DNA of 64,000 nt from Ostrea edulis (taxonomy: Eukaryota), in NCBI RefSeq assembly GCF_947568905.1, contig NC_079166.1, forward strand, positions 52,576,001 through 52,640,000. The letters are read 5' to 3'. A model generated the notes under the pieces. It saw nothing but the letters and a program-made list of their open reading frames with translations. It was not told the DNA's origin and did not search any database. The first letter of the stretch is position 1. Every line of letters starts with the position of its first letter. Shown here in pieces: positions 2,925 to 59,901 of the stretch. Both the position numbers and the translations under genes were made by a program.

Positions 2925-2979
2925 ATGATGGGACTGAGATTGTTCACGGCATTTTACTTTATTTTATTTATACTTACAG
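2925..2979 (+). CDS. Gene A exon 1, signal peptide MMGLRLFTAFYFILFILT
   Basis: ATG, hydrophobic stretch, donor ACAG|gtatgt, phase 1 joins exon 2 in frame (73-nt intron). Confidence 0.75.
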
Positions 2980-3052
2980 GTATGTTGAGATGCTATTTTC
3001 AATTTCTTTTATTTACCATTAAACACCTGTTATAAAGGTTAGTATTTTGTAG

Positions 3053-3484
3053 ACTTCCTGGTTGGATCCTCGCAAGAAGTTTTACCCGAGCCATTTTTCT
3101 GTGATAGTGCTTGCTATTCTTCGGGGATATCAGACTATTCCACAATTCATTCCGAATGTATTGATCCTGACAGTGTGATAGCCGTGTCAGCAGTAAAAGC
3201 AGTCACCAAACCGACGTCACAGAACTGCTCTCAAGTTCTCTCCACCACAGACTACAACTTCTACAACAGGTGCTGCGTAGTAGACGCTACAAAAGACTGC
3301 AAGGTGTTATACCGCAACATTGTCAATGATTCCTACACCTACGAGGCACAGAGAATATGTACAGGCCATCATAAATGCCCTCAAAGTATTCGGGTGCAAC
3401 GAATGGTGGTATCTTCCTATTGCGACAACCAGATTTTTCCTTCTGAGAATAACTACATGAAGATGGATTATTTCTGCATTAAAA
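3053..3484 (+). CDS. Gene A exon 2, 10-Cys SUEL/Gal-lectin-like domain
   Basis: ttttgtag| acceptor, AAAA|gtaaat donor, open 144 codons, about 60% identical (86/144 by hand) to gene B exon 2. Confidence 0.85.
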
Positions 3485-56318: not shown

Positions 56319-56391
56319 ATGAAAACAGAAAGGGTCATGCAGTTTTGCAGATGTGTGTTTCTAATTATTCTGTGTCCTTATTTCGTACGGG
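56319..56391 (+). CDS. Gene D exon 1, signal peptide MKTERVMQFCRCVFLIILCPYFVRG
   Basis: ATG, hydrophobic core, CGGG|gtaagc donor, phase 1. Confidence 0.78.
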
Positions 56392-59300
56392 GTAAGCATT
56401 AATTTGATCATAATTAGAGTAATAATCTGTTTCATTAACTTCTTTATGTGGTAAATTTAGTACTTTATTGGATGAAAATATCGAATGAAAAGCGTTTTGT
56501 TTCAATGTCACAGATATACACTGTATAACAAGGAGATGTCTTCATTGAGACTAGGATGTCGATTAATTAGAATTTCATTGGGTTTTTTTTTTTTCGTAGA
56601 TGAAATTTGCAAAAAATATATTTAGGAATCTTAATAATTTTACTTTTGTTTTCATAGGACAAGCAGATTTATATGCTTTTAGATGCTATGGAACAGGCTG
56701 GGTTATGGACGAGTCTTGTCCAGCAAATCACAAAATGTTTCCCATAGAGGTCAGAGTTGGAGCCACTGGTTTAGCAACAGGTTGTCCTAATAGTATAGTA
56801 AAGGGGACTAATACGTCTTTGGAGTCTACGTGTTGTAACCATAGCGATGCTGCTTGTCTTGATACATATCATAATACCTTAAACGATACGATAACGTATG
56901 TGTATCATGAAATGTGCATGGGTAGAAAACAGTGTGTGAATTATCCTATAGTGCGCTCAACCACCACAGGTCCAGTCGTGTTTTGTGATCAAAGTCTCTA
57001 TCATTCTACTACAACTGTACTAGAGTTGAAGTACCATTGCATTCAAGGTAGGGTATTGAATTTTATAAAGATCAATATTTCAGGGAATTTTCCTTGTAAA
57101 CTAGGCCTATGTGTAAAACTCTTTCAAGTTTGTCAGTCGTCTTTAAACTTTCAAAACCCAATACTTTGTAAATTGTTCTGTCTTCTTTTGCTAACCCTTT
57201 ACATGATTTTACTGAATGATCCTCTCATTATTTTCCAGGGGGTGTCAATGCTTTGAGAGATTATTGTGTTTGCAAAATATAAACACAAATTCATTACTGA
57301 ATTAGCATAATTAGACATGTATGTGATAGTGTGACGAAAAGGGTGTACCATCTAACGGTTTTATGCGTAATCATACTTTACGACGTCTAAGTGTTCTCAT
57401 TAAGTTTTACTTCATAGATGTATTTTGTATAAAATTTATTGTTAATTGATTCCTGTAGGCGAAATTAAATACAATGTAAATCAATGGTAACCAGAATGTT
57501 TATCAGTAACATATACATACACTGTGAACGTGATGATCTTCTTGAATAGATGAAATTTGTCTTCAATTATTCTCTCTATTTCAGATGAAAAATTTCTGTC
57601 TCTTTCAAATTCAATATCCATTTCAAAGGCTAATCTTTCTGATGTTCACATTGTGCTACAAAATTATTCGTCGTCTGGAATTCCGTCCACGACTACAGAT
57701 CTCCAATGTTCCATTGAAACATCCGAATGTGACGGACAAATCCGGATCAATGCCAAAGATCTGAGATTGTTCTTTAACACAAGTCAGTGTTTTCAAAGAA
57801 TCTATATCAATGACACGGATGATGGAGTGATACATGATTTCGACTGTAGTCATAATACGAATTTCATACAAAATGCTAATTTTTATACCAGTCAACATAA
57901 CCATATAATCATCCACTTCACGAACTCCTACGATCAGAACGGCGGATTCGTGTGGATAAAACCCACTCCAGGTAAAGGTTTGTGTTTAGTCAAGAGATGT
58001 TTACTAAATCAATTGTGGTCAAGACACATGGTTTTTTTTTTTTTTGGTTTTTTTGTTTTGTTTTTTTTTTTTTGTTATCGATTTTGCAATCACTGTTTTG
58101 ATATGAAAAAGTATTGGTCATAATCATGTTGTATTACATAGGATCCAAGAGGTAAGATGCTAATGATGTGTATGAGTAAAAGAAACATACCTTGAAAATA
58201 CCAATAAGAGGCATAGATACAACTTTGTAGATGAAAGCAATTGATGTCCATATGATTAATAAATTAAACATGTGTTTGTATGTATATATACTTGCAAGGC
58301 TGTCTTTTTTTTCAAATGATATTTGTCGTTTTTCTCAGTGAACACCAGTCACACCCTTTCTATAAACTGTCCTCCAAAAGAGGAAAATCTGGCCTGTTTC
58401 CCGACCACCACAACAGAGGAAACCACCACGTCAGTGGACACAACAACAGAAACAACACCACACATAACGGAAGTATCAAACAAAACAATGCAGTCTCGAA
58501 GCGACCCCACAAACGGACAACAAGACATAGCACTCATAGCTGGGATTGTTACCGCGGTCATCATTTGCATTTCCATTGGCATTGGCATTGTATGCGCTGT
58601 CAAGATGAAATGGAAAACGAAGCAATCCATAAATGTTAGTTTATTATCTATTCTGAAAGGAAAGGGAAACGCATATCTCGATATCTAAGTTCAAATAGTT
58701 TACGCAGGTTAAGCCGTATGTACCTGCTTATTCCATTATTTCAATAAATTAAAGCAACAAACGAGTCTACCCAATCGGGATATAGTATATTGGGGAAACT
58801 CTCAAACGTCTGGCAATCCAACTGTGAGACAGACGGTACAGACGTCATGTCAAAGCACGCACCTCTCATCATTTCCTAGCCGTGGCATGTGAATGAGGGA
58901 TAAAATTCGGGAAATAAATCGAAAACACGAACACCCGGTTGAAAAAGTAGGGAAAATTGTAAATTGTTTTACCAGCAATGAGTGTGTTAAAAAATCTCCA
59001 CACTTTTAATGAAAAATCAGGAACAAAGAATACAATGCCAGGAAAGTTACGGATGGTTGATTTCTGTAGCCAGTGTTTATACAGAGACCATTGTTACATG
59101 TAAAATACCCCTTAATTGTATCAAAAGTTAATATGCCTTCGAATCATACCATTAAAATTAAGGATATGCGATTTCTTTATCCTTTCAGTATATATTGTTC
59201 AATGCAAACAAATACATGCTCTGTCACCGATTATATAAAAATAGAAGTTTAGCTAACTGAGCAGGAGTACATGTAATATTTGTGCTTTTCCGTCAGTGAA

Positions 59301-59901
59301 TATATCACGTTTAAAACATGTTTACACCCCCTTATTCTTATCAAGAGACTGCATCAAAGGAAGAAAACGTAAACAAAAGCCTCCCGCGATTTCTGTTAGT
59401 TTCATTCACTGACTCCACATTCACTGACTCCACATTCACTGATTAATCGAGAAAAAAGAAATCTCTATGCAGACTATGTGTAATTTCTATTAAAACAACT
59501 GAACAAAATGTCTAAAAAAATTTCAGGATATTTCATCACAGGAAGAAAGAAGAGACTCCAGAACATCGACGTCAATACAATCCACATCTCAAATAATTAT
59601 ACCTCTAGCACATTCTTCTCCAGCAACCTCTTCTCAATTAGCGTCGGTAACTGAAGACCTGGGGAAGCGTACATTTCGAAAACAAAATTCACTCTCTCCT
59701 CTACAGCTAAACCCAAGTACATTTATTGATGAAGAGAACAAGAAAGCAAAGAGAAAGAAAAAAAAGAAAAAGAAAGATGAAGAAACGATCACTACTGACG
59801 TACAGGAAAATACAGAGACAAAGAAGAAGAAGAAAAAGAAGAAGAAGAAACACAAAAAACATAAAACTCAGTCACAAGAGAATTACGCTGACACCAAGTG
59901 A
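56319..59901 (+). CDS. Gene D: fourth, most divergent paralogue (~506 aa), intact-looking. Exons 56319-56391, 56658-57047, 57585-57971, 58339-58634, 59527-59901
   Basis: Five GT-AG exons in one open frame (phases 1,1,1,0); AATAAA at 59940. Confidence 0.85.
56658..57047 (+). CDS. Gene D exon 2, 10-Cys SUEL-like domain
   Basis: tttcatag| acceptor, CAAG|gtaggg donor; CMGRKQC and LELKYHC motifs. Confidence 0.87.
57585..57971 (+). CDS. Gene D exon 3, CUB-like domain
   Basis: atttcag| acceptor, CCAG|gtaaag donor; QCSI, DLRL, QC..FDC, IIIHF..GGFVW pattern. Confidence 0.87.
58339..58634 (+). CDS. Gene D exon 4, linker + Thr-rich stalk + TM helix
   Basis: tttctcag| acceptor, AAAT|gttagt donor; TTTTEETTTSVDTTTETT then IALIAGIVTAVIICISIGIGIVCAV. 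Confidence 0.87.
59527..59901 (+). CDS. Gene D last exon, Ser-rich then poly-Lys cytoplasmic tail
   Basis: tttcag| acceptor, phase 0, 124 open codons to TGA; not in ORF track because it has no start codon. Confidence 0.8.
   Translation, partial: DISSQEERRDSRTSTSIQSTSQIIIPLAHSSPATSSQLASVTEDLGKRTFRKQNSLSPLQLNPSTFIDEENKKAKRKKKKKKKDEETITTDVQENTETKKKKKKKKKKHKKHKTQSQENYADTK

What the first reader, a model, noticed from the sequence alone, without database searches (positions are those of the whole stretch)
2925..59901. Tandem cluster of four diverged lectin-like/CUB-like single-pass receptor genes
Seen: four same-strand genes share one exon plan (signal | 10-Cys domain | CUB-like domain | two-Cys linker and stalk | TM | tail), with phase-1 extracellular exons and a phase-0 tail exon. 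The ORF track shows only fragments of them. Established: SUEL and CUB domains act in invertebrate recognition, and clusters of diverse TM genes (Biomphalaria GRC/PTC2) influence parasite resistance. Inference: an uncharacterised bivalve surface-receptor family under birth-and-death evolution, possibly immune or allorecognition. I recognise no named gene.
Basis: partly seen in the sequence, partly recalled or inferred. Interest (0 to 1): 0.8.

Follow-up and report, generated by a model that had tools for sequence, protein, structure and literature searches.

The report
Oyster lectin-fold/CUB-fold membrane protein gene cluster
The window holds four neighbouring flat-oyster genes, three apparently intact and one probably broken, from an unnamed family seen so far only in bivalves; its members are single-pass membrane proteins whose outer part joins a very divergent rhamnose-lectin-type fold to a CUB fold, and nothing here shows an immune role.

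Summary
Four same-strand paralogues (A-D) share one exon plan. All introns in the extracellular part are phase 1, and the junction before the tail exon is phase 0. Gene B is Ostrea edulis LOC125674927 ("uncharacterized protein"), and its RefSeq protein matches my model.
- A has an in-frame TGA in its ancestral exon 3 and no TM or tail exon, so it is probably a pseudogene.
- B has an extra 42-nt micro-exon.
- D has stalk and TM fused in one exon.
- C's first exon is unresolved.

Pfam finds nothing. An AlphaFold2 model of B's ectodomain (pLDDT 91) gives two folds:
- CUB: the 21 best matches score Z 8.4-11.4.
- SUEL/rhamnose-binding lectin: the eight best matches score Z 5.1-7.2, then Z drops to 3.8. 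The domain is larger than usual (10 Cys) and lacks the YGR/DPC/KYL sugar motifs.

The family is small: 69 representatives among 1.84 billion proteins. Every named member is a bivalve protein with no function-based name. It has at least 13 exon-2 copies in this genome, six of them within 176 kb.

Orthologue comparisons give dN/dS of 0.13-0.3. Most paralogue pairs are saturated at synonymous sites. So this is an old, constrained family rather than a hyperdiverse one. An immune or allorecognition role remains untested speculation.

The parts
2904..2979 (+). Gene A exon 1 (start codon and signal peptide, phase-1 donor GTATGT)
   Evidence: parallels B exon 1, which RefSeq protein P0070 confirms
3053..3484 (+). 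Gene A exon 2 (432 nt, 10-Cys RBL/SUEL-fold domain)
   Evidence: 60% identical to B; profile E 5e-63
5708..6058 (+). Gene A ancestral exon 3 (351 nt, CUB-fold domain). In-frame TGA at 6037-6039. An upstream GT at 6023 (GTGAAT) would be an alternative phase-1 donor.
   Evidence: profile match reads through '1 TGA'; DNA alignment with B; donor GTAAGT kept at 6059
7116..7199 (+). Gene A exon 4 (two-Cys linker plus short Thr/Ser/Pro stretch). No TM or tail exon found downstream.
13969..14011 (+). Gene B (LOC125674927) exon 1, signal peptide
   Evidence: identical to the N-terminus of P0070
14225..14656 (+). Gene B exon 2, RBL/SUEL-fold 10-Cys domain
   Evidence: fold
14812..15162 (+). Gene B exon 3, CUB-fold domain
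   Evidence: fold
16150..16248 (+). Gene B exon 4, two-Cys linker and start of stalk
16565..16606 (+).
18628..18716 (+). Gene B transmembrane exon (phase 1 in, phase 0 out)
24313..24579 (+). Gene B cytoplasmic tail exon including stop (acidic stretch, then a poly-Lys run)
33385..33777 (+). Gene C exon 2, RBL/SUEL-fold domain. Exon 1 is unresolved; the weak candidate 33299-33344 would leave a 40-nt intron.
34159..34494 (+). Gene C exon 3, CUB-fold domain
34601..34720 (+). Gene C exon 4, two-Cys linker and charged stalk
35554..35645 (+). Gene C transmembrane exon
35981..36226 (+). Gene C tail exon including stop; shares a conserved motif block with B's tail
56337..56391 (+). Gene D exon 1 (signal peptide, donor GTAAGC)
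   Evidence: conserved in a related oyster contig L026; junction agrees with C. gigas P0097
56658..57047 (+). Gene D exon 2, RBL/SUEL-fold domain
   Evidence: 74% identical to Saccostrea XP_062620327.1
57585..57971 (+). Gene D exon 3, CUB-fold domain (four Cys)
   Evidence: 68% identical to Saccostrea orthologue
58339..58634 (+). Gene D fused linker, Thr-rich stalk and TM exon
59527..59901 (+). Gene D tail exon including stop (two poly-Lys runs)
   Evidence: the same two runs occur in orthologues P0004 and P0097

Best explanation
The four genes are tandem paralogues of an unnamed family of type I membrane glycoproteins, seen so far only in bivalves. The species is Ostrea edulis, chromosome-scale contig C3; gene B is LOC125674927.

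Each intact protein is built as follows:
- a signal peptide;
- a membrane-distal domain of about 130 residues with 10 Cys and a divergent, enlarged SUEL/rhamnose-binding-lectin (RBL) fold;
- a CUB-fold beta-sandwich packed against that domain;
- a short hairpin closed by two Cys;
- a Ser/Thr/Pro-rich or charged stalk of variable length;
- one transmembrane helix;
- a disordered cytoplasmic tail that often carries poly-Lys runs.

Shown here: the gene structures, the two folds, the taxonomic range and copy number, purifying selection on C and D, and the nonsense codon in A.

Inferred: the RBL-CUB module is the ligand-binding head of a cell-surface receptor, co-receptor or adhesion molecule. In logic it resembles Kremen, neuropilin, EVA-1 and the latrophilin lectin domain. 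The ligand is more likely a protein, or a non-rhamnose ligand, than the classical RBL sugars. The reason is that the family has its own conserved motifs (G-A-K and T-N-Y-M ... Y-Y-C-I) where RBLs have YGR and DPC/KYL. The tail has no recognisable signalling domain, so signalling would need partners. B, C and D look functional. A is most likely a recently disabled copy.
For: Paralogy and shared exon plan.

Gene B equals RefSeq XP_056014077.1 (P0070), 440 aa, matching my exons plus one micro-exon.

The AF2 model of P0070:15-300 has pLDDT 91.2 and pTM 0.88.

CUB fold: the 21 best VIA matches are all CUB domains. They score Z 8.4-11.4, rmsd 2.3-2.9 A, with 98-109 residues aligned.

RBL fold:
- The domain-only model has pLDDT 89.5.
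- The eight best VIA matches are all SUEL/RBL/Gal_lectin domains (Z 5.1-7.2, 82-93 residues aligned); the next match scores Z 3.8.
- The first 11 Foldseek matches are all RBL-fold domains, with probability 0.77-1.00.
- The only PDB sequence hit of the family profile is the LAT-1 lectin domain (E 0.1), aligned in the right register.
- UniRef names two Mya members 'SUEL-type lectin domain-containing'.

TM helix and tails.

Range: 69 representatives at E<=1e-3 among 1.84 billion proteins. Every named one is from a bivalve.

Copy number: 13 exon-2 matches in the genome.

Constraint: dN/dS is 0.13-0.18 for D exons 2+3 and 0.27-0.32 for C exon 2 against a related oyster.

A's nonsense codon.
Against: Function is wholly inferred; no expression, localisation or binding data were reachable. 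Pfam does not recognise either domain. The RBL match has only middling Z (about 7), a range the tool warns can reflect a common arrangement. Some relatives have no TM (P0005, P0014, P0008, P0038), so part of the family may be secreted or mis-annotated. C lacks an identified signal-peptide exon. Only B has a public gene model in this species that I could find. The TGA in A could be an assembly error or an allele-specific null.
Confidence: 0.6

Rival explanations
1. One reading: the cluster encodes immune or allorecognition receptors that diversify quickly by birth-and-death, comparable to the Biomphalaria GRC/PTC2 clusters of polymorphic single-pass membrane genes.
For: Tandem cluster of six members within 176 kb, plus dispersed copies. 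One probably dead copy. Lineage-specific duplicates A/B and C/E. Lectin-type fold. Similar tandem clusters on single contigs in Saccostrea and Ruditapes. The C/E paralogue dN/dS of 0.42 is moderately relaxed. The GRC/PTC2 precedent is real (PMC7494358).
Against: Orthologue dN/dS is 0.13-0.32, which is purifying. Paralogues are old, with dS saturated. D is retained one-to-one in Ostrea, Saccostrea and Crassostrea. The RBL sugar motifs are absent. The tail has no TIR, death, ITAM or similar signalling motif. There are no expression or polymorphism data. No homology to GRC/PTC2 genes was shown.
Confidence: 0.15
2. The proteins are membrane-tethered or secreted mucin-like glycoproteins. Their main job would be structural: glycocalyx, mucus or matrix. 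The RBL-CUB head would be a cross-linking or anchoring module rather than a signalling receptor.
For: Ser/Thr/Pro-rich stalks of very variable length, with STP fraction up to 0.75 in the 60 residues before the TM. The Saccostrea A/B-like protein P0005 has a long repeat stalk of more than 300 residues and no TM. Automatic names are 'mucin-5AC-like' and 'mucin-3A/3B-like'. Some members have 3-4 tandem RBL-CUB modules.
Against: The stalks of B, C and D in this window are short (about 40-60 residues). C's stalk is charged rather than Ser/Thr-rich. The conserved cytoplasmic motif block shared by B and C and the conserved poly-Lys runs argue for an intracellular function.
Confidence: 0.15
3. The cluster is mostly non-functional: decaying copies of a family whose working members lie elsewhere.
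For: A has a nonsense codon and no TM or tail exon. C has no clear first exon. Large satellite arrays and a retroelement lie between the genes.
Against: All exons of B, C and D are open with canonical GT/AG sites and conserved phases. B has RefSeq isoforms. Purifying selection acts on C and D. D's exon 1 is conserved in another oyster.
Confidence: 0.05

Closest known systems
SUEL-type / rhamnose-binding lectin (RBL) domain (Pfam PF02140), e.g. latrophilin Lec domain, CSL3, SUL-I
   Same: Same alpha/beta fold by structure search. Same register of the first strand and of the C-terminal ...Y-x-C strand. Like the latrophilin and EVA-1 lectin domains, it sits at the membrane-distal tip of a membrane protein.
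   Different: About 130 residues instead of about 100. Ten Cys instead of eight. YGR is replaced by G-A-K, there is no DPC, and KYL is replaced by N-Y-M (against PMC10817417). It is not detected by the Pfam model. Sugar binding is therefore doubtful.
CUB domain (Pfam PF00431), e.g. Kremen, PCPE-1, neuropilin a1/a2, C1s, cubilin
   Same: Same beta-sandwich fold. The 21 best matches are all CUB, with Z 8.4-11.4 and about 100 residues aligned.
   Different: Not detected by Pfam CUB models. Only two Cys are invariant among the four window copies, not the canonical four. The Ca2+ site was not assessed.
Single-pass co-receptors with CUB or SUEL heads and short unstructured tails: Kremen1/2, neuropilins, NETO, EVA-1/EVA1C
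   Same: Overall working logic: a small stack of binding domains, a stalk, one TM, and a tail without an enzymatic domain. The ESM Atlas shape search lists EVA1C and CUB proteins among the nearest clusters.
   Different: None of them combines one RBL-fold with one CUB-fold domain. No sequence homology beyond fold level. The Atlas shows no large cluster with the same two-domain arrangement at TM above 0.5 by both measures.
Biomphalaria GRC/PTC2 clusters of polymorphic single-pass membrane genes (PMC7494358)
   Same: Tandem cluster of divergent single-pass membrane genes in a mollusc.
   Different: No homology shown. GRC/PTC2 are defined by extreme allelic divergence and association with parasite resistance, and neither was tested here. 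The interspecific dN/dS found here is low.

Membership tests
SUEL/RBL lectin domain (PF02140) | Match to the Pfam model above its gathering score | tested here: not met
   No PF02140 hit on any exon or on ten full-length relatives, even at E<=1 or 0.01. UniRef does label two Mya relatives SUEL-type.
SUEL/RBL lectin domain (PF02140) | Characteristic alpha/beta RBL fold | tested here: met
   The eight best VIA matches are all RBL/Gal_lectin domains (Z 5.1-7.2, 82-93 residues aligned); the next match is Z 3.8. The first 11 Foldseek matches are RBL-fold, probability 0.77-1.00.
SUEL/RBL lectin domain (PF02140) | YGR, DPC and KYL motifs of the sugar-binding site (PMC10817417) | tested here: not met
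   The family columns read [VA]-G-A-K, C-[ND]-x-[ST], and T-N-Y-M instead (motif definition).
SUEL/RBL lectin domain (PF02140) | Eight conserved Cys forming four disulfides in about 100 residues | tested here: inconclusive
   10 Cys in 49 of 58 family domains, in about 130 residues. The pairing was not determined.
SUEL/RBL lectin domain (PF02140) | Binding of L-rhamnose or D-galactose | not testable with these tools
   Needs recombinant protein and a glycan assay.
CUB domain (PF00431) | Match to Pfam CUB models above the gathering score | tested here: not met
   No CUB hit.
CUB domain (PF00431) | CUB beta-sandwich fold | tested here: met
   The 21 best matches are all CUB: Z 8.4-11.4, rmsd 2.3-2.9 A, 98-109 residues aligned.
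CUB domain (PF00431) | Four conserved Cys (two disulfides) | tested here: not met
   Only two Cys are invariant in exon 3 of A-D; D alone has four.
CUB domain (PF00431) | Ca2+-binding Tyr/Glu/Asp/Asp site of ligand-binding CUBs | not tested
   No residue-level structural alignment was available.
Polymorphic transmembrane clusters (GRC/PTC2 type) | Extreme allelic divergence, gene presence/absence between haplotypes, and association with resistance | not testable with these tools
   Only one haplotype was available. Interspecific dN/dS is 0.13-0.32.

The most novel reading that the evidence does not exclude
The family is a new class of bivalve surface receptor. Its conserved G-A-K / T-N-Y-M pocket, at the position of the RBL sugar site, would recognise a specific ligand from a pathogen, gamete or neighbouring cell. 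Its conserved poly-Lys tail, which resembles a nuclear localisation signal, would carry the signal, for instance after regulated cleavage. The tandem cluster would then be a polymorphic recognition locus relevant to oyster disease resistance.
Probability: 0.1. Interest if true: 0.75.

Novelty: new variant of a known kind. Interest (0 to 1): 0.4.

Why it matters
Bivalve genomes are full of lineage-specific, unnamed membrane proteins. This finding gives one such family a structural identity (RBL-fold plus CUB-fold head, stalk, TM, polybasic tail), correct gene models, a copy count and a taxonomic range. Expression and association studies in the flat oyster, for example on Bonamia resistance, can therefore interpret hits at LOC125674927 and its neighbours. 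It also shows that two common recognition folds can diverge beyond the reach of Pfam. The immune role that made the finding attractive has no support yet, and the selection signal argues against a hyperdiverse recognition locus.

Tried and rejected
- Pfam on nine single exons and on ten full-length relatives: no SUEL or CUB hit, only sub-threshold noise.
- PDB sequence search with the two-domain profile found nothing. With the domain-1 profile the only hit was the LAT-1 lectin domain at E 0.1.
- The word-index protein search with P0070 found only its own isoform. With P0004 it found one C. gigas orthologue and one unnamed sequence. With the A3 profile it found only bivalve or unnamed hits.
- The look-up of encoding contigs for P0070 returned no record.
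- Foldseek with the two-domain model gave mostly meaningless jelly-roll hits (Cry toxins, birnavirus capsids) at low TM-score. I disregarded these, apart from the Kremen, neuropilin and P113 rows, in favour of the VIA and single-domain searches.
- The ESM Atlas feature search scored only 0.76-0.80, so it is a lead only.
- Searches for a TM or tail exon of gene A by hydropathy and motif scans found only satellite-derived stretches.
- Searches for C's exon 1 gave several weak candidates, none convincing. A related oyster has an open 'start codon plus hydrophobic' reading directly upstream of exon 2. In O. edulis that reading is out of frame and stopped.
- My first idea of a frameshift in A's exon 3 was wrong; it is an in-frame nonsense codon.
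- dN/dS between the window paralogues is uninformative because dS is saturated.
- Four literature searches on locus names and on the domain combination found nothing about this family.
- A local BLAST run unexpectedly omitted the D/P0004 pair; the compare tool gave the values instead.
- Joined spliced models of A, C and D were assembled only inside local scripts, to check frame and length and for a local BLAST against proteins already fetched. They were never sent to Pfam, the fold tools or the large databases.
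Full report
WHAT IS THERE

The window is AT-rich animal DNA without N runs. A comparison of all plus-strand open segments shows four sets of homologous segments in the same order and on the same strand.
- Exon 2: A/B 61% identity over 142 aa (E 6e-64), A/C 29% (1e-14), A/D 24% (5e-6), B/C 32% (6e-10), B/D 25% (3e-6).
- Exon 3: A/B 38% (8e-26), A/C 25% (1.5e-7).
- Tail exon: B/C 39-49% (8e-12).

Exon 2 ends one base after C-I-[KQ] in all four genes. 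Exon 3 and the linker exon are phase 1 at both ends. The TM exon ends in phase 0, and the tail exon starts in phase 0. All four have a C-x7/8-C linker. B, C and D have one strongly hydrophobic helix followed by basic residues.

IDENTITY OF THE LOCUS

A profile of the four exon-2 domains (A1) was searched against 1.84 billion representative proteins. It found only 69 at E<=1e-3. One of them (P0067) and its cluster mate P0070 are Ostrea edulis XP_048768260.2 and XP_056014077.1, "uncharacterized protein LOC125674927" isoforms X2 and X1. They lie on a 98,268,724-bp contig, the same length as the window's contig C3.

P0070 (440 aa) equals my model of B exon for exon, with two corrections:
- an extra 42-nt micro-exon at 16565-16606;
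- a tail acceptor at 24313.

With these corrections the exon lengths sum to 1323 nt, which is 440 codons plus the stop.

THE OTHER THREE GENES

D is the orthologue of Saccostrea cucullata XP_062620327.1, at 74% identity in exon 2 and 68% in exon 3, with the same residues across both junctions. It is also the orthologue of Crassostrea gigas XP_011451179.1 (61%). Its first exon (56337-56391) is conserved in a contig of a related oyster (L026), including the donor. It also agrees with the C. gigas N-terminus. In D, linker, stalk and TM form one exon.

C has open exons 2 to 6. Its signal-peptide exon could not be placed. The best candidate (33299-33344) would leave a 40-nt intron and is weakly hydrophobic.

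A is not a complete copy.
- Its ancestral exon 3 is 351 nt, exactly as in B, and keeps the GTAAGT donor.
- It has TGA at 6037-6039 where B and C have the Arg codon of the conserved G-R-F-W-[IV]-G strand.
- No TM or tail exon exists between 7200 and 13960, a stretch largely filled by a 22-bp satellite.
- A/B exon 2 has dN 0.29 and a saturated dS of 2.6, and all ten Cys are kept. So A was under constraint for most of its history and was probably disabled recently. An allele-specific null or an assembly error cannot be excluded.

FOLDS

Pfam finds neither SUEL nor CUB, either on the exons or on ten full-length relatives. The ectodomain of P0070 (residues 15-300) was folded with a 37-row family alignment. 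The model has pLDDT 91.2 and pTM 0.88.

Aligned against 48,161 PDB representatives, the 21 best matches all involve model residues about 145-264 and are all CUB domains. They include Kremen, PCPE-1, neuropilins, C1s, enteropeptidase, MAP-1, cubilin, TSG-6, MASP-1, Gpr126, Neto2 and spermadhesin. They score Z 8.4-11.4, rmsd 2.3-2.9 A, with 98-109 residues aligned.

The first domain was also folded alone, with 58 rows, giving pLDDT 89.5.
- Its eight best VIA matches are all SUEL/RBL/Gal_lectin domains: latrophilin Lec, SUL-I, CSL3, P113, PfRIPR and the rice beta-galactosidase C-terminal domain.
- They score Z 5.1-7.2 and cover 82-93 residues; for the stand-alone latrophilin Lec chains that is about 90 of 98 residues. 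The next match scores Z 3.8.
- The first 11 Foldseek rows are RBL-fold domains with probability 0.77-1.00, after which probability falls to 0.08.
- The family profile's only PDB sequence hit is the C. elegans LAT-1 lectin domain (E 0.1), aligned in the expected register.
- UniRef labels two Mya relatives "SUEL-type lectin domain-containing".

The membership features are only partly met. RBL domains are defined by about 100 residues, eight Cys and the YGR, DPC and KYL motifs (PMC10817417). This family has about 130 residues and ten Cys (49 of 58 sequences). At the equivalent positions it has its own strongly conserved motifs: [VA]-G-A-K (Lys in 49 of 58) and T-N-Y-M...D-Y-Y-C-I. The CUB-fold domain keeps only two invariant Cys among A-D.

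FAMILY RANGE AND COPY NUMBER

Every named relative I looked up is from a bivalve. The genera are Ostrea, Saccostrea, Crassostrea, Mizuhopecten, Pecten, Argopecten, Mya, Mactra, Ruditapes, Mytilus, Dreissena, Sinanodonta and Potamilus. The names are "uncharacterized" or artefacts of low-complexity tails, such as mucin-like, unc-89-like, papilin-like or histone methyltransferase-like. No paper mentions the loci.

In the O. edulis genome the exon-2 profile finds 13 matches:
- the four in the window;
- one about 25 kb downstream (E, C-like);
- one about 32 kb upstream on the minus strand (D-like, with its exon 3 7 kb further on);
- seven dispersed on C3, C10 and C1.

Tandem arrangement recurs in other species. 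Three Saccostrea members lie on one 392-kb contig, and three Ruditapes loci lie on one 196-kb contig.

A quick ML tree of the exon-2 domain (SH-aLRT support only; the careful search did not finish) puts A, B, C and E with Saccostrea P0005 in one oyster clade (support 97). It puts D with its Saccostrea and Crassostrea orthologues in a distant clade (support 100). So the cluster mixes an old paralogue (D) with an oyster-specific expansion.

SELECTION

Synonymous sites are saturated between most window paralogues. The youngest pair, C/E exon 2, gives dN/dS 0.42.

Two contigs from one JGI sample (L026, L028) carry the D and C orthologues of an unidentified related oyster, at about 79-80% nucleotide identity in exons. 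Against them dN/dS is 0.13-0.18 for D exons 2+3 (257 codons) and 0.27-0.32 for C exon 2. This is average purifying selection. Positively selected sites are not excluded, but there is no gene-wide sign of the hyperdiversity seen in GRC/PTC2 (PMC7494358).

HOW IT MOST LIKELY WORKS

Shown: a type I topology with a rigid RBL-CUB head, a disulfide hairpin, a variable stalk, one TM and a disordered tail.

Inferred: a surface binding receptor, co-receptor or adhesion molecule. The closest working analogues are Kremen and neuropilin (CUB heads) and EVA-1 and latrophilin (RBL heads that bind proteins). The loss of the sugar motifs, together with the gain of family-specific conserved residues at the same place, argues for a conserved ligand that is not the classical one.

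The tails have no known signalling domain. Of the 19 long relatives that have a TM, 11 carry poly-Lys/Arg runs, from oysters to unionids. D shares its two runs with its Saccostrea and Crassostrea orthologues. What these runs do is unknown; membrane phospholipid binding and nuclear targeting after cleavage are two possibilities.

I put 0.85 on the structural and evolutionary description, and about 0.5 on the receptor/co-receptor function.

VERDICT

This is a real, correctly spotted gene cluster. It belongs to an unnamed family seen only in bivalves and built from two known folds in a combination I did not find described. One of the four copies is probably dead. The immune/allorecognition idea has no support here and is weakened by the selection data.

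Other notes of this scan report further unnamed CUB-fold single-pass arrays elsewhere in the same genome. Arrays of this general kind therefore seem common in this oyster, which lowers the surprise.

Noticed in passing
window 8859-12412; 25190-27479; 36588-40519; 63218-64000: Large satellite arrays lie between and after the genes: 22 bp x159, 53 bp x43 (GC-rich, about 0.47), 28 bp x141, and 166 bp running off the window end. The first fills the place where gene A's TM and tail exons would be expected.
   Followed up: partly
window 40664-45503, minus strand: Degraded LTR-retrotransposon-like element between C and D. One ORF has a zinc knuckle and a gag-type aspartic protease (Pfam). A short RT-like ORF and two ORFs without a family lie beside it. 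Observed only.
   Followed up: partly
tails of B (24313-24579) and D (59527-59901); relatives P0004, P0097, P0019, P0042, P0068 and others: Poly-Lys/Arg runs of 5-13 residues recur in the cytoplasmic tails of 11 of the 19 TM-bearing relatives across distant bivalves. D and its orthologues share two such runs, although the rest of the tail diverges.
   Followed up: partly
relatives P0008 (Pecten), P0038 (Potamilus), P0029, P0043: Some family members carry 2-4 tandem RBL-CUB modules in one protein. This fits the all-phase-1 exons, which allow module duplication without a frame shift.
   Followed up: no
outside the window: G000:C3:52543437-52543844 and 52535735-52536058 (minus); C3:52665106-52665474 and 52681843-52682175 (plus): Two further family members flank the window, giving six within about 176 kb. 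The downstream one (E) is C-like, with its exon-3 match 16 kb after exon 2.
   Followed up: partly
window 14025-14191: A 41-bp unit repeated about four times inside intron 1 of gene B. It creates spurious ATG-led ORFs just upstream of exon 2.
   Followed up: no
window 2008-2400 and 29195-29362: Short shared open segments (71-83% identity over 18-24 aa) suggest a dispersed repeat upstream of A and between B and C.
   Followed up: no
loci L026 and L028 (JGI sample 3300045951): A 'metagenome' sample holds contigs of an unidentified oyster related to O. edulis, with about 79-80% exon identity to D and C. One of its ORFs is mislabelled 'ATP-dependent Zn protease'.
   Followed up: partly
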